From Anthoceros angustus (lineage: Eukaryota > Plantae > Anthocerotophyta): DNA of 64,000 bases. The DNA lies in contig MU008165.1 of NCBI GenBank assembly GCA_010909165.1, forward strand, positions 1,054,001 to 1,118,000. The letters are read 5' to 3'. This document shows, piece by piece, positions 44,109 through 53,195 of this stretch. The position numbers and the translations under genes were made by a program. The notes under the pieces were generated by a model, which did no database searches, was not told the DNA's origin, and saw only the letters and a program-made list of their open reading frames with translations. Each line of letters starts with the position of its first letter. Position 1 is the first letter of the stretch.

Positions 44109-45730
44109 TCACAGCCTAGACTTGATGAGTGGTGTCTGCTGTTGGAGGAAGGCTGCCGCAGCAGCAACTCCACTGCCCAATTTGATATTATAGCCAATGT
44201 CTGCTAGACAGATCTCCACACCAGATAGTACACCGAGCAATTGAAGCTGGAACCAGGTAGAGGCAGCGTTAGACAAGAAGAAGAGAAAATAGATCGGGTT
44301 CAGGGATGGCTAAAAATAGATCCTATACCTCATTCACGTTGCCCAGGTGTCCGATCCTGAAGACCTTCCCATTCACCTTGTTCAAACCTATTCCCAGATT
44401 AAGATTGTACTTCTTCCACGCTATCTTAACAACGTCATTGCTGTTGATGTGGGAGGGCACCAGCACTGCCGTGACAGTGTCGCTGTACCATTCTTCGCTC
44501 TGGGTGCAGAGTTTCAAGCCCCAGGCCTGGACTGCCAGCCTGCGGGGGAGGCACATTGCAGGTAAGCGGAGGAGAAGAATGGGCGGGGAAGGGAAGGGAA
44601 GCAGCGTCACCATGGCAACCAAGCCCTTACCTAGTGGCGGTGGCAAGGCGAGTGTGCCTGGCAAACACGTTCTCCAGTCCTTCCTGGAAGATGAGGTCGA
44701 GAGCAGCCCTGAGAGCATACAGCATCTGACTGGAGGGAGTGTAAGGCCAGTACGATCCCTGGTTGTAGAACTTGATGTAATCAGCCCAGTCGAAGAAGAC
44801 CCTGGCGGACTTGGCAGTCTGGGAAGCCTTGATGGCCTTGGGGCTGGCGCACACGATCCCCAGCCCGGTGGGTAAGGACAGAGCCTTCTGCGAGCCGGTG
44901 AGCGCCACGTCCACCCTCCACTCGTCCATGCGGAAGTCGATGGCGCCGATGGAGGACACTCCGTCCACCAGCAGCAGCGCCGGGTGGTAGGTCTCGTCTG
45001 CGCGCAATGAGGTGGTGGGTGAGCGGCAAGCCCAGAAGCAGAAGAGAGACCGTCGGGGCGCAGGGCAAGAGAACACGAGAGGAGGCGTACCCAGCACCCT
45101 ACGGATGGCCGCAATGTTGTTGGTCACGCCCGTGGAGGTCTCGTTGTGCACCACGCAGATGGCCTTCACCTCGCGCGCGGAGTCGGCCTGCAGCTTGGAT
45201 TTGAGGTGGCGGATATCCACGCCTGCTCCCCACTCCACGTCCACCACGTCCACGTTGAAGTTGAGCCGCTGCATCATGTTGATCCATAGCAGGCTGAATT
45301 GGCCGAAGCTGAAGGAGATGATCTTGTCCCCCGGCGACAGGGTGTTGGTGAGCGCGCTCTCCCAGGCTCCCGTGCCTGCAGCAGCCCACCCACGTTCCCG
45401 CCTCAGCCACTGCAGCGCAGAGCAGAGCAGGGCAGGGCAGAGCAGAGCAGGGCAGGGCAGAGCAGAGCAGAGCAAAGCAGAAAGAACCGGAATTCGGAGA
45501 GCTCAGTCGCTGTCACGAAGCTCACCAGTGGTGGGGAAGATGAAGGAGGTGGCTGTGGTGGTCTTGAAGATGCGCTTCACGTCATCCAGCACGGACTTGG
45601 AGAGCTTGGGAAATGCAGGCGAGCGGTGATCCTCGTTGTTGCGGCTCAGAGCCTGGAGCACAGGCTCCGGGATGTTGGTCGGGCCCGGCACGAACAGGTG
45701 GTTCCTGCCGGGGGCCGGGTAGTACTCCAT
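44109..45730 (-). CDS. AGT1: Peroxisomal serine:glyoxylate / alanine:glyoxylate aminotransferase (photorespiration), multi-exon
   Basis: MEYYPAPGRNHLFVPGPTNIPE, GTGAWESALTNTLSPGD, VVHNETSTGV, VDGVSSIG..VDVALTGSQKALSLPTG (PLP lysine), FRIGHLGNVNE. Ends in PTS1 ...PLIKSRL*. Confidence 0.97.
45415..45480. repeat. Pentanucleotide microsatellite (gcaga/gcagg)n in AGT1 intron 1; (cccaa)n at 45996-46021 upstream
   Basis: agcagagcagggcagggcagagcagagcagggcagggcagagcagagcagag. Confidence 0.85.
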
Positions 45731-46616
45731 CCCCACAGCCCGACCAAATTCGGAGGGTTGGCCGACTCGCGTCTCACGTCTCACACGTCTCGCGTCTCAC
45801 CAGCTCGCAGGAGCAGAGTGGCGAGGCGAGGCGAGGCGATTGCTCAGACCACGCGCTTGCAAACCAGCGCTTGTCAGCTTCTTCGCCTCGGCTCGCGAGA
45901 CTAAATGCTGGACGGAGCGCCCAGCCAGCGGTGCGAGAATGGGAGGTTGAGCAAGGTCCCGCTCGGATAAGAGAGCCATAGCTGGCCTGGCACACAACCC
46001 AACCCAACCCAACCCAACCCACACCGTGCTGCCATGCCCATGTTGTGCATGTCCCACATGCCCTGGGAGACCCGGCTTCCGGGGCACTCTGATCCCATTG
46101 GACAACGGGTCGCCACACAGTCCCCGCTGCCTGCACCACGGCCGAGTGGCGAGTGGCCAGTGGCCAGTGGCGAGGCAAACAGGGCCCACCCGATCGTCAA
46201 ATGCATGGACAAAATTGCGACGGTTGTGAGTCACAACGTTTCATTACAAACAGTAAAGCTCCACGCTCCAGCTCCACTCGTCGGGCTGCCGCTCCTCATT
46301 GGCGCCGTTTCGGCCTACTTGCCGTCATGGCTTCAACTAGAACTGCTGAGTCATCGCACCCGCCGATGCCAAGGTGTGGGGCCCTCAACAAGGCTGAGGC
46401 CGCAGCCTGCATGGGGCGTTGAGCGTTGCCGCCGGATCCTCCGACATTCCCAAGTCATCCATTGCTGGGAAGTTGGAACCAGGAGTTACGGCTCCGACAC
46501 CTGCTTCCCAGCCGGGTAGAACGCGTGGGTAACACATACAGTATGTACATCCCCACTCGCTCTCGGAATATCGTTCGGGGAAGAGGAAACTAGCACGAGC
46601 GAAGTCTCTCACCTCT

Positions 46617-49600
46617 TCATAACTCCACTATAGCTTGTTTCAGGAGCTGCACTACCTTCTCCATCCGACCAGCGGCCTGAAAAAAGGTGCCACCCAACAA
46701 GTCGGGGATTCTAGCGGGGCATAATTGCCGCAAGGTGCCCAACCATGTGGCTGAGAAGGGTAAGCGAGTTACCTGGCTGACTGCTTTCAACCTTACTTCA
46801 GCTTCCAAAACACACACACTGCCAGCCTCCTGCGCCTGGCTAACAAGCTTCTGGTGTGCCGCCCCTGCAGGCGGATTGGAATGATACTTTCAGTACCAAC
46901 ATTGTTGCTCGAAATTCTTCACTACCACCTTTGTTGCTCCGAATTCAAAACAGCAGAGTCTGAAAGGTTCTTTTGCATACTTACTTTGCTTGTCTGCACA
47001 GAGTAGGACTTCAGCCTTCGTGGTCTCCAGTTCACCGAAAATGTGTTCGCAAAGTTGCAAATGCGCACTCAGCTCATTCCTGTATTGCTGGAACGCTGCT
47101 TTCATCTTCTGATTTCCATCTGCATCCGGAATTTTCAATGTTCTTGGGTACGCAGCTTGCCAGTTATGATAAAAATCTTGGTAGCATCTGACGTTTGGTT
47201 ACCTCGCAGCTGATCTTCCAATTGGCCAAATCTACGCTTACTTTCCTTCTTCAACTCCTCACTGCGTGCATACGTGTGAGCATAGCATTTGAGAAACTCT
47301 GCTGCAGTTTGCCACTGACGCCTGAAGTAAGCAATTGACTTTATCTCAGTGATCACCTACTTGTCTTTCTCGAAGGCACTTGCCAGAGATTGAATGTGGA
47401 GATGCGCTTTTGTGGTTACTTGGCACAGAATCTGTGCAATTTTCTGTTGGGTAAGCAGGCTACTTTTTTGCTTCAGTCTGTGTAGCATGTTAGCAACTAT
47501 TCCGATTTCCCTGTATGTAGACCATGAGAGATAGATTTACAACCTGCAACCCATTTCAATCCCAACAGCTGATACATATGCTTCCTGACACCAGTCAACT
47601 TTAGAAGGAACGTGATTTGTACGTACCCACTAGAAGGATCCACCTCAACGTCGCTCTGATACTCGACCTCGACGCTTGTGTGTTCTGCTTTTATACCAGA
47701 AGAATCTCATGTGAGCAAGCCATAGCCACGGCACTGCGGCGAACGGTAGGTAATTTCCTCAGGTTTCCAGCAAACAGTCTGCAAGTACAACCACCTTTTG
47801 ATTTGTCCCTTTTACCCAAACGAGGTGTTGGCCTCTCTTGCTCCATAGCTTTTGTGGCCCATCTTCGCCTGATTCTTGGAAAGATTCGAATACAATCTGG
47901 TTGTCAATTCAGGCGGGGGAGCAATCAGTTCATGAACGCTCCAGAAAGCAGTTTCTCCAACAACATAGCCAGGTTCTTGAAGCAAAAAATACCTGCTGCG
48001 AGGTCTGGTGCTTGGCCATGCTCCAGTGAACATGCAAGATTAGGCTCCTGACAATCAGCTGGAGAGTTATCAACGGGACTTGATTCGGGGCCCTCGGACT
48101 CCTTGCGGTCTTCATTAGCTGGACCATTATGCTGGCTGCAGGTCAAGGGTGCCAAACGACGTCTACATTCAACCTCTGTCCTAGTTGCTTGCTAGACGTG
48201 CTGCTAATAACGACCAATGCCGTCACACTTTTTGAGCTGGAGTGGATACGGAGTTCGGTTTTGACGAAACAGTATCGTCCTGAAGGAATGTATCATACAG
48301 GAGACCACCCCGAAACGCTGTCAGGCAAGTACCATAGTTTGGAGCGTAGTTTAGCTTGGAAGGCCAACCTGCCCGTCGCCTCTGACGACGAAAGTTCCTC
48401 GCAGGGGCAGCCCCGTCTGCCGTAGTCGTGAATGCTGACGTACCCATACAAGGATCCTCTGGCTCTCGTTGTAAGAAAGCGGCTCCATTGTTACCCCCCT
48501 CTTCTGTCCCTGCCACTTTTTGCTTTTTGCAAGCAACAACCTCCGCAGTCACGTCCAGGGCTGCTGGGGTGGTCGCTGACACATTCCCCAACACCTCAGC
48601 TTGCTCCGTTTGATGTACTTGGCCGACGCGAACATGAGATCTCGAGATGCCTGTGAAGTGGGTGCTTTCTACTCCAAAGTTTTGCACCGTGCTCCGCCTT
48701 CGTTTACCGGAGACATGAGAGCCCATCCTTCCTGCGTCATCACTGGAAGCTTCTGCAGGCTGTCTCAACTTCCCCTTCCGAGTCCTGACACACTTTTTGT
48801 CCGTGCGTATCAAACCAGGTTTTTTATGTACTCTAGTTGCATCATCTTTCGTGTTCTTTCTCCCAGGATGTTCTCCTCCGACACGAGGCTGCCGCAAACT
48901 CTTCTTGGGTGTTGGTACGTACTCCGAGTCCTCATCATTGGCCTTGGTCTTCTTCGCCTTACTAGATAACACTGCACCACACCTAGGAATCTCGCTTGTT
49001 CCTGGTGCAGCTGGACTACTGGAAGATGATATGCCGGCGGCAGCATTTGCAGGCTCCAATTCTGGTGAGGAACTTATGGGTTTCGAACATCCTGCAATCC
49101 TGTCACCAGTCTCAACTGGCTCGGGACTGTCGTCTAGACTCTGAGCCTTACTTTCTTGCATCCTTGCCGGTTCGCTTGGATCGGGACCTTCAATTCTCTC
49201 CTGATCTGCTGATGCTCCTGGACACGGTGGCTCGACATTACGAACAGCCGATACCTTCCTGCCGCAAACCTCAGGCCTTTGATCTCGTAAGAGTCCCCCT
49301 TCATTTCCTGCCTTTCTTGCCGAGCATAGCTGCATGGATGTTTTAGACAATTGGACGCCTGCATTCTTCCCTCCGCCCACATCAGGTGCTACGGTTCTGA
49401 GGGCCAGTTGCCCGCCTACTCTTTCAGGAGTGCAGGGACAGGGGTATTTGGATGCCTCCGAATGTTCGGCATGAACCTCTCTGGCGCCGGTTGTTCCATG
49501 ACTGCGTGATGCCAGGAGTACCGAAAGGATTCTTGACCCCACACTCCGAGATTTCAGTGGCCTGGGCTCTACAAACTCTTCCACAGCCACCATTTTGGGC

Positions 49601-52193
49601 AACGGAATTATTATTCCATATGAAGCTTTCCTAGCAGCTTGAGAAGAACCAGATGCCGGCTCTGGCACTTGGCTGAGACGGGCTTCCTGCTTCCCACCGT
49701 TGTCCTAACTAGTCAACTTACGCAACTTATTGAAATGCGGCTGTGCAAACGACTTCGTACCTGTTGCAGTCTCCTCGTGTGTTGTGTTATCAACGGGATC
49801 AGGGAAGCTGACACTGTTAAGACATCTGGTCGAAACAATGTCCAACAGATGAAACGGGCAGCCAGGGATCAGCATTTTCTTATCGTCGGTGCACAGGGGC
49901 TCAATTTCTTTCTGACTATGAGAATCTTTCTTGGAGTAATGTATTGTCGGCGTCACCTTCAGCACTAAGGTCGAACGTAATAAGCGACGACTCTGAACAC
50001 CCTTGCGCCTGCACAAAAGCACGATGCAGAGCATCATCTGTGCCAGGAAGGAATATGGAGCAACGACGACAGCAGCAGCAGATGACCACGTTCAACAGGG
50101 TTGGGCACCTGCTGTAAGCCAAGGTTATTTATCTTTGAGGCAGCAACAATCTCCAGATGTGTTTCAGAGAGTCCTGCAGGTGCAGGAGTTTCGTGTTGCA
50201 GTTCGACAAGCCATCTTACACTAAAGCATACTGAGAACATTGTCAGTGCCTAGTGCACAAACAACCATGCCTGATCGTCAATGTCACAGAACCCAGCAAA
50301 CTATGAGAAGAGGAGGCTTACGATGGATTTCGATAATTTCACGGTACTGGATGTCAATTAACTGAGCAGAATTGTCCTCCTGAGAACAAGATTACATAAA
50401 TGTTGTGTCACAAAATCTGTTTCTGACAAAATTCCAGCATCAAAAGCAAATGGTTACGGAGTGTTTAGCATTTACTAGCAATGCATCTTTCTGAGAGGAC
50501 ATAGTCAAAGCATAGAAGCTGAGGTGGTCATCTCCGAAGTCAACCCATCTGTCCTCCGCTGAAGACAGATCGTTTCCATTCACGATAATCTTGTGTGCCA
50601 GGAAAGAGTAAACCCTACACAGATCTACCAAATCAGTAGTTGGAGAAACACTTAACGCGAGGGCAGCAAAGCATTCAAAGTGGAAGTATACGCACCTTCT
50701 CAAAGACCCAAGGGACTGATTCATCGCGCAGACGAAGTGTCTTATCTCAGCAGAGAGTTTTGGGCTCTTTAACCGAAGCATCTGGGACATGGCTGCTCTA
50801 GGAACTTCATCTTCGATGAGATCACGGAGGTGAGGCCCCCTTTTGAGAAGTCTAAGCAAAATCTCCGAGATGGTGGCCTGTGTGCAGAAATCCCCACATC
50901 TGGGAAGGACAACTCGGAACAACTTGTGACTGCACGAGTTCCAGTTTCGAGAGATTGGCATTTGTGAGAAACTGCCAACTTCAGTGAACCCTCAAGCAGC
51001 TGAGTAAAGAGCTCGATGCTGTAAGTGCTCCAGAGCCAGAGTTCCAGCCTAGTCATTGCAGCTGCGTCCAGTGATGGAATAAAAAACGAACCAGTCAGCA
51101 GAGCAGCGCAGGAAAGATTGTTGATTGGGGGAGCACTTGGTGATCAGGGCACACAGTGTGTCCATTGCAGCCCGCTGCAGCTTCACAGAGCCTGATTTAG
51201 CAGGAGCGAGGGCCAGGAGTCGGGGTACAAAGTGCTTGCCAAATTCTTCCTTCCCTGCAAAGAAGAGCTCACATGAACGTGAGGTCTCGCACGACGAAAC
51301 CAACTCGCCGTCCGCCCATGCCGCAGTGAAATCAACCGGATCCGAACCTGCTGCCAGTTCGCTGAAATCTTCAATGGCATAGAGAAGCTCCAGCACGGAA
51401 TTTAGCACCTCGATTCTGCTGTAGTCCCTCAGCAACAGATCGTCGTATGTTTTGGTCAGAACACGCACAATGCCTGAATCCAACACTTTGTTGAAGAAGA
51501 GAGTCCTTGACCAGCTTTGAAGGCACTTGAAAACTCCCTGCAAAGTTGCGTGGTGCAGCTCCTGGGGATACTCAGACTGCAAGACGACAATCCTGACTGA
51601 GAAATGCTCACCAGGTTTCCGATAGACGAGAAATTCTGCACGGACTATGCCTGCGGGGGAACGGACGTCCCAAACCTGCCCAAGGAAACTGATGATTTTG
51701 CGAAGCAGATGTTCCGAAGGAGCTGAATCAGGGCCCACGCTCAGCAGCGCTGTGACTTGCGGAAACACGGTCGTCATCTGTGCCTCGTCCGTGGCTTCTG
51801 CTCCTGTGCCTGTGAGCTTCCTCATGGTCCACTCGCATTCCAATTCAGATCCCCTAAACCTAGTTTGCACATTGTCCTCACGGAGACTCCAATCTAGTCA
51901 TGAAATTCCACCACTTTCTTGAGCACGCAGAAAGTCCAGAGCAAGATTCAAGACAATCTGGTCCAACAACGAGAACAAGGAGCTCCTCGGCTCCGAAGGA
52001 AATTGCCAAATGCCAGAAATTGAATTGGCAGCTGAAGGCAAAATTGAGAAAGTGAAATTGGCAGCTGTTTGAAGTTTTAATGCCTGCAGGGTTGATCAAG
52101 GATTGAAGCAAACATTGCTGCCCTGACCTTGCCACGCGGAACAGGAGAAGAGGCCGCGTGTGTGCCGGGTGTCGAAGTGATTCCTGTTTCCAT
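46617..52193 (-). CDS. ASY3: Meiotic chromosome-axis core protein ASY3/PAIR3 (SYCP2/Red1 family): N-terminal ARM + PH-like domain, HORMAD closure motif, disordered middle, C-terminal coiled coil. Start codon uncertain (52193 or 51825).
   Basis: SYCP2-like motifs CGDFCTQATISEILLRL, IRHFVCAMNQSLGSLRR|VYSF and WVDFGDDHLSFY. Closure-like GSSQAARKASYGIII. Coiled coil KMKAAFQQYRNELSAHLQLCEHIFGELETTKAEVLLCADKQ...EAEVRLKAVSQ resembles the ASY3 C-terminus. Confidence 0.8.
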
Positions 52194-52418
52194 TATCTCG
52201 GCCCGCCCGGCCCGGGCTTGAATCTGGGAATCTCCCCCGGCCACGAAATGGCTGGGGGCTGCGGGAAAGCCACGCGAAGATGAACGCCAGCCTCTCATCC
52301 TGCCGTTTCAGGCCGAACTTGCGAGGCCGAGTTGCTTGAGACATTGGTGTAATCCCATCCCGCCAGCAAGGGAATTGAAACCGGCGCCGGCGGCTCGGAT
52401 TTCTGGACAGGCGGTGCC

Positions 52419-53195
52419 ATGGCTGCAGCATTCTGTGGCTCGTGCGGAGCTTTGATCGGGTCGGGGCGTTCCTCATTGTCATCCTCCGCCTCATCAGCTT
52501 TCGGGACACTCTCCTCAGCGGAAGTTCTCAATGCGCAAGGAGCCTGCCGTGTAGGCACATCACCAGCCGGTCTGACAGTGCGTGCTGGAAAGGCCAAGCC
52601 TGGCAAGGAGGAGGAGCCGAAGAAGAGCAAGCAATCCCTGCTTTCCGCCTTCACTGATGCAATTGATTTCTCCTCTGTGAGATCGGAAGCAGATGCGGAT
52701 TTGTTGGAAGACGCACGAGCTGCCACGAAATCTGGCGAAAAGATGTCTCGGGAGCAGGTATGGATGCCACCGCAGCTCAAAGTTTTCGTTATCGACTTGG
52801 ACAGTGTTTGGCATTGCTGCGTGTTCACATCCAGCCAGCTTCCTTGCAGTACGGTGCGTTGAGGAGGAAAATTGGAGGAACGTACAGGGACTTCTTCAAG
52901 GATTACGTGGAAGGTTGGTAGATCGTGAATTGCGTGATGACCATGTGCGTGAGCTTGTAAGGAACGTCACCGAATTGGCCAGGAATGTGGAGTTTCTGAA
53001 TCCGTGTAACGTTGGTTTGTACCAGTGGATGGAGAGTATGTGGACGAAGGCTGGGTGGACAAAACCTGTAGGGTGTGCAGGAAGAACACCTCTGGTGCAC
53101 CTCGAACAGTGGACAAGCTAGGAAGATACGCGCATGTAGCATGCCTGGAAAACCAAAAGTCAGGCAACTTTTTTACTCGTCTTTTCGGCAAGTAA
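52419..53195 (+). CDS. Conserved green-lineage plastid-targeted small protein with a C-terminal CxxC..HxxC putative Zn site (exons 52419-52757, 52850-52913, 53026-53195)
   Basis: Ser/Ala-rich transit peptide ending VRA. Spliced: [82 protein letters not shown]...YAHVACLENQKSGNFFTRLFGK*. Confidence 0.88.

What the first reader, a model, noticed from the sequence alone, without database searches (positions are those of the whole stretch)
46617..52193. Land-plant ASY3 retaining the SYCP2/Red1-type ARM-PH N-terminal domain ahead of the closure motif
Seen: an N-terminal helical domain with CGDFCTQATISEILLRL, IRHFVCAMNQSLGSLRRVYSF and WVDFGDDHLSFY. Next come GSSQAARKASYGIII (49606-49650), a long disordered exon and a coiled coil. 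Established: SYCP2 has ARM-like plus PH-like domains with GDYDLQ..EAL.R, R.F...N..LG..RRV.TF and WIDF..LSFY motifs. Angiosperm ASY3/PAIR3 lacks this domain and begins directly with the ASY1-binding closure motif (SSQSRKISIG). Inference: this gene joins both architectures in one protein, supporting SYCP2-ASY3 orthology and placing the loss of the domain after this lineage diverged.
Basis: partly seen in the sequence, partly recalled or inferred. Interest (0 to 1): 0.8.

Follow-up and report, generated by a model that had tools for sequence, protein, structure and literature searches.

The report
Non-seed-plant ASY3 with SYCP2-type N-domain
This is the meiotic chromosome-axis gene ASY3 of a non-seed land plant (probably a hornwort), and it still has the folded front domain found in animal SYCP2 and yeast Red1 that flowering plants have lost; this is real, but it was already published for non-seed plants in 2021.

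Summary
All four quoted motifs sit at the stated places on the minus strand. Spliced RNA contigs of two sister species, plus one extra inferred intron, give an 18-exon, stop-free model of 1128 aa (ATG 51825, stop 46617-46619).

A search with exons 4-5 finds full-length proteins of about 950-1470 aa in liverworts, a moss, lycophytes and a fern, and fragments in a streptophyte alga. No named hit is a seed plant. The six full-length liverwort, lycophyte and fern proteins scanned carry Pfam ASY3-like at the C-terminus; the moss protein did not reach E 0.1.

A profile of their N-termini plus the window's exons hits mouse SYCP2 (PDB 5IWZ) at E 4e-13. A profile without the window gives 3e-5. An AlphaFold model of the closest relative matches 5IWZ over its whole length (VIA Z 27, next best 15).

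The only conserved block in the long disordered linker is RKxSxGI at aa 398. This is where SYCP2 has its closure motif, and it resembles the N-terminus of Arabidopsis ASY3.

It is not new: Tromer et al. 2021 state that Spermatophyta ASY3 lost the ARM and PH domains.

One caveat: the reading frame is intact only if a 100-nt GT..AG segment (50009-50108) is spliced out, and that was not seen directly in this species.

The parts
46617..52058 (-). Whole transcription unit of the ASY3/SYCP2-type axis core gene. The CDS runs 51825-46617 in 18 exons and the 5' UTR reaches at least about 52047.
   Evidence: Spliced RNA contigs of sister species and of the same organism. All 17 introns are GT..AG and the ORF is stop-free at 1128 aa.
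50696..51825 (-). Exons 1-4 (51825-51676, 51576-51348, 51254-51092, 50929-50696), aa 1-258. This is the ARM-like helical part of the N-terminal domain and includes CGDFCTQATISEILLRL.
   Evidence: Homolog profile hits at 7e-47 and 6.5e-28. Exon identity to Diphasiastrum is 41-57%. The part aligns to 5IWZ. The relative's model has helices at residues 1-250.
49761..50614 (-). Exons 5-9 (50614-50476, 50379-50322, 50173-50109, 50008-49957, 49825-49761), aa 259-385. This is the PH-like (Spt16M-like) part and includes RVYSF and WVDFGDDHLSFY.
   Evidence: The relative's model has strands at 258-348 and a helix at 351-368. 5IWZ is matched through model residue 377.
50009..50108 (-). Inferred extra intron of 100 nt (GTGCCC..TGCAG). 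If it is retained, the frame runs into a TGA at 50036-50034.
   Evidence: Four points favour an intron: canonical ends; a 1-nt length difference between species at 50101; relatives have 16-26 aa here, which fits 19 aa when spliced and not 52 aa when retained; the ORF is stop-free only when it is removed. Against: it is retained in organism B's otherwise spliced contigs and in organism A's unspliced contig.
49606..49650 (-). Closure-motif-like peptide GSSQAARKASYGIII (aa 398-412). The conserved core is RKxSxGI followed by PLPK.
   Evidence: It is the only conserved block of the linker across 9 species, with S and G invariant. Its position equals that of the SYCP2 closure motif at 395-414. It resembles A. 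thaliana ASY3 residues 14-23, SSQSRKISIG, as printed in PMC9957857.
47627..49605 (-). Disordered linker: the rest of exon 10 (49686-48250) plus exons 11-13.
   Evidence: The composition is rich in A/S/G/P/R. There is no conserved column beyond the motif and no Pfam hit.
46620..47510 (-). Exons 14-18 (47510-47361, 47261-47203, 47119-46985, 46864-46773, 46676-46620). This is the ASY3-like C-terminal coiled-coil region.
   Evidence: Homolog profile hits at iE 2e-4 (47363-47515) and 7e-5 (46968-47114), at profile positions 1057-1178. The same region of six scanned relatives is Pfam PF20435 ASY3-like, E 1e-8 to 1e-16. Composition is rich in L/Q/E/A/K.
51822..51872 (-). Short upstream ORF in the 5' UTR: ATG 51872, 16 codons, and a TGA that overlaps the main ATG (ATGA).
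   Evidence: Read directly from the sequence. Its function was not tested.

Best explanation
This is the ASY3 (SYCP2/Red1-type) meiotic axis core gene of a non-seed land plant, probably a hornwort, in the ancestral eukaryotic architecture.

The protein has four parts:
- a folded N-terminal ARM-like plus PH-like domain, about aa 1-385;
- directly after it, a short closure-type motif (RKASYGI, aa 398-412);
- a poorly conserved, compositionally biased (presumably disordered) linker of about 550 aa;
- a C-terminal ASY3-like coiled coil.

By analogy with SYCP2, Red1 and Arabidopsis ASY3, the proposed mechanism is as follows. The motif is captured by the HORMA domain of ASY1. The coiled coil forms tetramers and filaments with ASY4. 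The N-domain gives an extra contact to chromatin or to a chromosomal partner. All of this mechanism is inferred, not shown.

What is shown here:
- the gene structure;
- homology of both ends;
- the fold of the N-domain in a 47%-identical relative;
- conservation and position of the motif.

Seed-plant ASY3 looks like this protein cut off just before the motif.
For: - Gene model. 15 splice joints are listed in RNA contigs, 11 as clean CT..AC and four offset by divergence from the window; two further introns were inferred (one from a 4-letter joint in table 5c, one from contig ends). One extra intron was also inferred. Together they give a stop-free 1128-aa ORF.
- Relatives. phmmer with exons 4-5 against 1.84 billion representatives finds 15 hits. 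The best are full-length proteins of Diphasiastrum, Calypogeia, Adiantum, Selaginella, Riccia, Marchantia and Physcomitrium, plus Spirogloea fragments. No named hit is a seed plant; five fragment or weak hits carry no taxon name.
- C-terminus. Six of the seven full-length relatives scanned carry PF20435 ASY3-like C-terminally; Physcomitrium did not reach E 0.1.
- Colinearity. A profile of the relatives hits the window colinearly from 51597 to 46968.
- SYCP2 homology. N-terminal profile against PDB gives 5iwz_A at E 4.2e-13. The profile without the window gives 3.3e-5.
- Fold. AF2 model of the relative has pLDDT 87.6 and pTM 0.86. Foldseek gives 5IWZ at E 7e-10, TM 0.61/0.64. VIA gives Z 27.0 with 334 of 372 residues aligned, next best Z 15.3.
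- Motif. Conservation; position parallel to SYCP2 and Red1.
- Indels. The only coding-exon indel listed between species is 9 nt (at 51801); another 9-nt insertion lies in the 5' UTR. The listed 1-nt indels within the gene lie in introns or in the inferred intron. Four further indel rows were not shown.
Against: - Pfam SYCP2_ARLD/SLD models do not hit the exons (E<=10) or the full-length relatives (E<=0.1).
- The window's C-terminal exons are too short to hit PF20435 directly, so the ASY3-like label is transitive.
- The structure was predicted for a relative, not for the window's protein.
- Splicing of 50009-50108 is not seen. The same-organism contig is unspliced across 49428-50378, and organism B keeps the segment.
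- Tissue and meiotic expression are unknown.
- HORMA binding was not tested.
Confidence: 0.88

Rival explanations
1. The gene is broken or truncated in this species. The 100-nt segment 50009-50108 is exon, as in organism B's contigs. The extra base near 50101 shifts the frame, and the product is an ARM-PH-only protein of about 370 aa, or the transcript is degraded.
For: - With organism B's splice pattern the window's frame ends at TGA 50036-50034.
- B's contigs keep the segment at full depth while removing six other introns.
- The same-organism contig is unspliced here.
Against: - The 814 codons downstream stay open and conserved.
- The segment has canonical GT..AG ends and a typical size.
- Organism C shares the 'extra' base, so it is not a private lesion.
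- Relatives have no room for the 33 extra residues.
- The only coding-exon indel listed between species is a multiple of three.
Confidence: 0.09
2. Two neighbouring genes were read as one: an ARM/PH protein upstream and an angiosperm-like short ASY3 that starts at the closure motif.
For: - No single listed contig spans 49827-49957.
- Exon 10 has an in-frame start-like codon (GTG) 6 codons into the exon (49668), just before the motif.
Against: - A 1681-nt contig of the same organism joins exons 2-6 to 49428-49686.
- Contigs end exactly at the two exon borders of the missing joint.
- Relatives in seven genera are single proteins with both parts.
- The frames agree across the join.
Confidence: 0.02
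3. The N-terminal domain is a generic armadillo-repeat domain, and the SYCP2 likeness is only a shared fold.
For: - Many ARM proteins match the helical part (Z 13-15).
- Pfam SYCP2 models are silent.
Against: - Sequence-level profile hit to SYCP2 alone in the whole PDB, E 4e-13, with three motif blocks in register.
- Only 5IWZ matches ARM and PH parts together (Z 27, model residues 5-377).
- The closure motif follows at the same place as in SYCP2.
Confidence: 0.01

Closest known systems
Non-seed-plant ASY3 (SYCP2-type) proteins, e.g. Marchantia polymorpha Mp2g06990 (P0021), Diphasiastrum KAJ7558258 (P0001), Selaginella, Riccia, Adiantum. UniProt names them 'ASY3-like coiled-coil domain-containing'. 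Tromer et al. 2021 describe them as retaining ARM-PH.
   Same: - Same four-part architecture and a similar length (about 950-1470 aa).
- 47% identity over the N-domain.
- Same CGDF / RSVYSF / W.xFG..SFY motifs.
- Same RKxSIGI..PLP motif at aa 383-400 in most; Selaginella has GKTSIGI at 371 in the RefSeq models, and no such motif was found in the two Calypogeia proteins.
- Same ASY3-like C-terminus.
   Different: - It comes from a lineage not nested in any sampled group; the tree is unresolved.
- It has an extra small intron whose removal is needed to keep the frame.
Mammalian SYCP2 (N-terminal ARLD+SLD domain, PDB 5IWZ; closure motif at 395-414)
   Same: - ARM-like plus PH-like domain, homologous by sequence profile and by fold.
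- The closure motif directly follows the domain at nearly the same residue number.
- Disordered linker and C-terminal coiled coil.
   Different: - About 17% identity.
- Pfam SYCP2_ARLD/SLD models do not reach it.
- The coiled coil is of the ASY3/ASY4 type, not the SYCP2/SYCP3 type.
- A plant cohesin-binding motif may exist in the linker; none was found here.
Angiosperm ASY3 / rice PAIR3 (A. thaliana Q0WR66, 793 aa)
   Same: - The closure motif SSQ.RK.S.G resembles the window's SSQAARKASYG.
- Disordered linker.
- ASY3-like coiled coil (Pfam PF20435).
   Different: The angiosperm protein starts at the closure motif (residues 8-35) and has no ARM-PH domain. The window's protein has about 385 aa of folded domain in front of the motif.
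Budding-yeast Red1
   Same: [quoted passage not shown]
   Different: No detectable sequence similarity was tested here. Red1 forms homotetramers without an ASY4/SYCP3-like partner.

Membership tests
SYCP2/Red1/ASY3 axis core proteins (SYCP2-type) | N-terminal ARM-like plus PH-like (Spt16M-like) domain | tested here: met
   - Profile including the window's exons against 5iwz_A: E 4.2e-13. Relatives only: 3.3e-5.
- The relative's AF2 model against 5IWZ: Foldseek E 7e-10, VIA Z 27 over residues 5-377.
- The window's exons are 47% identical to that relative.
SYCP2/Red1/ASY3 axis core proteins (SYCP2-type) | HORMAD-binding closure motif directly after the N-domain | tested here: inconclusive
   A conserved RKxSxGI motif sits at aa 398, the expected place, and resembles the Arabidopsis ASY3 motif. 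Binding to an ASY1 HORMA domain could not be tested with these tools.
SYCP2/Red1/ASY3 axis core proteins (SYCP2-type) | Long disordered linker | tested here: met
   About 550 aa, rich in A/S/G/P/R, with no conserved columns and no Pfam hit. No disorder predictor was run.
Pfam PF20435 ASY3-like (C-terminal coiled coil) | Match to the ASY3-like model at the C-terminus | tested here: inconclusive
   The window's short C-terminal exons give no direct Pfam hit. They do match the relatives' profile at positions 1057-1178 (iE 2e-4 and 7e-5). Six of the seven relatives scanned hit PF20435 above its cut-off there. The joined model was not searched.
Pfam SYCP2_ARLD / SYCP2_SLD | Score above the curated cut-off of these models | tested here: not met
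   No hit for the exons at E<=10 or for full-length relatives at E<=0.1. The relatives' precomputed Pfam label is PF26290 DUF8079, listed before PF20435 and so presumably the N-terminal part.
SYCP2/Red1/ASY3 axis core proteins (SYCP2-type) | Heterotetramer and filament with a short coiled-coil partner (ASY4/SYCP3); meiotic expression | not testable with these tools
   No partner gene lies in the window. The RNA contigs show transcription, but the tissue is unknown.

The most novel reading that the evidence does not exclude
The 100-nt segment 50009-50108 is a species-variable retained intron that works as a switch. When spliced, it gives the full axis protein. When retained in this species, it gives an ARM-PH-only product without closure motif or coiled coil. 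In the sister species the segment is 99 nt long and is kept in otherwise spliced contigs.

More broadly, the Pfam 'DUF8079' of non-seed plants is the SYCP2 ARM-PH domain. That makes bryophyte models the place to find what this domain binds and how seed plants do without it.
Probability: 0.1. Interest if true: 0.4.

Novelty: new member of a known kind. Interest (0 to 1): 0.25.

Why it matters
It confirms, in one more deep land-plant lineage, that plant ASY3 descends from a SYCP2/Red1-type protein with the full ARM-PH, closure motif and coiled-coil layout. It also supports the view that seed plants lost the front domain by truncation just before the closure motif.

The point is published (Tromer et al. 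2021). It is still overlooked: recent axis papers write 'missing in plant ASY3', and Pfam labels the relatives with a DUF (DUF8079), which appears to be this domain.

The practical value is better annotation. It also points to tractable bryophytes as systems for asking what the ARM-PH domain binds.

Tried and rejected
- **Pfam on ORF pieces and single exons.** Nothing relevant.
- **phmmer of the two N-terminal ORFs against PDB.** Nothing.
- **Word search with the 273-aa ORF.** No hit within the allowed length range.
- **Word search with the full-length alignment.** Only three known relatives, because of the candidate cap.
- **Word search with the C-terminal region of P0001.** Only itself. No seed-plant ASY3 could therefore be fetched by reference. 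The closure-motif comparison with Arabidopsis rests on the sequence printed in PMC9957857.
- **Pfam on the closure regions of the window and five relatives.** No match to the start of the ASY3-like model.
- **Pattern search for the Arabidopsis REC8-binding motif (L..KLW.IL type).** No match in the linker of the window or of the relatives.
- **Enumeration of all in-frame splice paths.** It timed out, then gave 587 solutions and was uninformative. A restricted version plus the spacing in relatives singled out 50108-50009.
- **Tree of the N-domain.** Unresolved, so it does not name the lineage.
- **Pfam on three neighbouring ORFs.** Nothing.
Full report
**1. Observation**

The gene lies on the minus strand.

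| Peptide | Window position | Residues in the model |
|---|---|---|
| CGDFCTQATISEILLRL | 50898-50848 | 192-208 |
| IRHFVCAMNQSLGSLRRVYSF | 50745-50602, across an 81-nt intron | 243-263 |
| WVDFGDDHLSFY | 50547-50512 | 282-293 |
| GSSQAARKASYGIII | 49650-49606 | 398-412 |

**2. Gene model**

The runs found for the stretch are listed as 'RNA?'. Their contigs, laid on window:46450-52400 (5951 letters, within the operators' limit), carry CT..AC joints. These are GT..AG introns on the minus strand, so the runs are RNA.

- X1 is 100% identical to the window and is the same organism.
- X2/X7 (organism B) and X11 (organism C) are 90-99% alike and are sister species.

After small shifts allowed by the joints' ambiguity, 16 introns are GT..AG. 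Thirteen of them follow listed joints directly or by a one-base shift. Two more (50380-50475, 49687-49760) were placed by shifting non-canonical joints. One (50174-50321) was placed from a joint with three letters between. Intron 46865-46984 was inferred from a 4-letter joint in table 5c. Intron 49826-49956 was inferred from contigs that end at the two exon borders.

From ATG 51825 the frame is open through exon 6 and into exon 7. With organism B's pattern it then meets TGA at 50036-50034. From 50104 to the stop at 46619-46617 another frame is open for 814 codons. The break lies near 50101, where B's contigs have one base less. Organism C and the same-organism contig keep the base.

A 100-nt GT..AG segment, 50108-50009, removes the problem. 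With it spliced out, the model has 18 exons and a stop-free ORF of 1128 aa.

Four points favour this extra intron:
- It has canonical ends and the size typical of this gene's introns.
- A 1-nt length difference between close species falls in it, whereas the only coding-exon indel listed is 9 nt.
- Relatives have 16-26 residues between the LE(I/L)V and F..EDL blocks. The spliced form gives 19 and the retained form 52.
- Reading through it hits a stop.

Against it, B's contigs keep the segment while six other introns are removed. The one contig of the window's own organism is unspliced from 49428 to 50378. The intron is therefore inferred, not seen.

**3. How the joined model was handled**

I did not give the joined model to any search or fold tool. 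Exons were searched one by one by reference. The joined ORF was checked for frame, stops, composition and motif positions in local scripts. Its alignment rows were also merged in a local script for one tree.

**4. One gene or two**

The same-organism contig (1681 nt) joins exons 2-6 to 49428-49686, which holds the closure-like motif. B's contigs join 49827-47795, and C/X7 joints continue to 46675. The one joint without a spanning contig (49957|49825) is flanked by contigs that stop exactly at the exon borders.

A profile built only from other species' full-length proteins hits the window's six-frame pieces on this strand alone, in colinear order from 51597 to 46968.

**5. Relatives**

Single exons and ORFs give nothing in Pfam or in PDB by phmmer, and the first word search was blank. 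I therefore ran the exhaustive phmmer with the exon 4-5 ORF (collected). It gave 15 hits. Names come:

- Full-length proteins of Diphasiastrum complanatum (1172 aa, E 2e-19), Calypogeia fissa, Adiantum capillus-veneris, Selaginella moellendorffii, two Riccia species, Marchantia polymorpha (1129 aa) and Physcomitrium patens.
- Fragments of the alga Spirogloea muscicola.
- No named hit is a seed plant, although seed-plant proteomes are presumably well represented in that library. Five fragment or weak hits (Logan and ENA sources) carry no taxon name.

Seven full-length relatives and one Spirogloea fragment were scanned. The six liverwort, lycophyte and fern proteins hit Pfam PF20435 'ASY3-like' at the C-terminus above its cut-off, E 1e-8 to 1e-16. 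The Physcomitrium protein and the fragment did not reach E 0.1. Their precomputed label for the other family is PF26290 DUF8079, listed before PF20435.

The window's exons 2-6 align colinearly with them at 124 identical of 262 columns against Diphasiastrum.

**6. N-terminal domain**

- A profile of the N-termini plus the window's exons finds one significant chain in the whole PDB: 5iwz_A, mouse SYCP2. E is 4.2e-13, with profile positions 48-314 against chain residues 86-382.
- In that alignment GDYELQVGIVEALCRM, RIFLNLVNGILGDKRRVYTF and FWIDF..LSFY lie opposite the plant motifs.
- The full-length profile without any window row still gives 3.3e-5.
- AlphaFold2 of Diphasiastrum residues 1-395 with that alignment gives pLDDT 87.6 and pTM 0.86. 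It has helices to residue 250, then eight strands (plus one short helix) and a closing helix.
- Foldseek ranks 5IWZ first (E 7.1e-10, TM 0.61/0.64, 389 columns). Generic armadillo proteins follow at 5e-4 and TM about 0.3.
- VIA-align gives Z 27.0, rmsd 4.5 Å, 334 of 372 residues, model 5-377. The next entry has Z 15.3 and covers only the helical part.

**7. Closure-like motif**

Across nine species the only conserved block between the domain and the coiled coil is RKxSIGIxxPLPK, with S and G invariant.

In the window it starts at aa 398. In the Diphasiastrum, Adiantum, Riccia and Marchantia proteins it starts at 383-400. Selaginella has GKTSIGI at 371 in the RefSeq models. The Physcomitrium protein, aligned only over residues 1-262, has RKSSQGI at 267. 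No such motif was found in the two Calypogeia proteins. SYCP2's motif is at 395-414 and Red1's at 346-362, each directly after the domain.

A. thaliana ASY3 begins MSDYRSFGSNYHPSSQSRKISIGV, as printed in PMC9957857. Its residues 2-50 bind the ASY1 HORMA domain. The likeness SSQ-RK-S-G to the window's SSQAARKASYG is visible but short. Pfam did not link the two, and binding was not tested.

**8. Mechanism (inferred from the families named)**

- ASY1's HORMA domain closes around the motif.
- The C-terminal coiled coil pairs with ASY4 into tetramers and filaments.
- The ARM-PH domain adds a contact whose partner is unknown even in SYCP2 and Red1.

A REC8-binding motif like that of Arabidopsis ASY3 was not found by pattern.

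**9. What is known**

West et al. 2019 and a 2026 preprint (10.64898/2026.01.19.700424) state that plant ASY3 lacks the N-domain.

Tromer et al. [quoted passage not shown] They list Marchantia polymorpha in the caption of their SYCP2-type search path.

The fern Adiantum, which keeps the domain, bounds the loss more tightly than this window does.

**10. Organism**

The nearest proteins are about equally distant (about 45-48% identity) in lycophyte, liverwort and fern. A maximum-likelihood tree does not nest the window in any sampled group. Small introns and about 50% GC fit a hornwort, and other notes of this scan guess the same. I did not prove it.

**11. Verdict**

The gene is a new member of a known kind. 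The remaining uncertainty is whether 50009-50108 is spliced out in this species.

Noticed in passing
window 50009-50108 (minus strand): A 100-nt GT..AG segment is 99 nt long in sister species B, where it is kept in contigs that have six other introns removed. In the window, retention gives a premature stop. It may be a weak or regulated intron.
   Followed up: partly
window 51577-51675, 51255-51347, 50615-50695 (minus strand): Three introns (99, 93 and 81 nt) are multiples of three and free of stops. Plain ORFs of 273 and 173 aa therefore read straight through them. This can mislead ORF-based reading and dilutes single-ORF searches.
   Followed up: no
window 51822-51872 (minus strand): An upstream ORF of 16 codons lies in the 5' UTR, and its TGA overlaps the main ATG (ATGA). 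A 2-codon uORF begins at about 51901. Both are possible translational controls. They were not tested.
   Followed up: no
window 52272-52862 (plus strand): A divergently transcribed, far more deeply covered gene starts about 210 nt from the 5' end of the ASY3-like transcript (depth 146 against about 10 in run X11). Its first ORF looks like a transit peptide followed by a charged region. It has no Pfam hit.
   Followed up: partly
P0021 / L001 (Marchantia), P0001, P0005: Pfam labels these relatives with PF26290 'DUF8079', listed before PF20435 and so presumably the N-terminal part. The profile and fold matches here show the N-terminal domain is the SYCP2-type ARM-PH domain, so the DUF could be renamed or placed in a clan with SYCP2_ARLD/SLD.
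   Followed up: partly
P0005, P0018 (Selaginella), P0013 (Spirogloea): Some deposited gene models of relatives are fused to unrelated N-terminal pieces. One has a GDT1 transporter fragment; another has an unrelated N-terminal extension (cyclophilin-like by eye, not scanned). These are likely annotation errors.
   Followed up: no
window 45503-45784 (minus strand): Just downstream lies an exon whose translation looks, from memory only, like the N-terminus of a serine-glyoxylate/alanine-glyoxylate aminotransferase. Pfam gave no hit on this short piece.
   Followed up: partly
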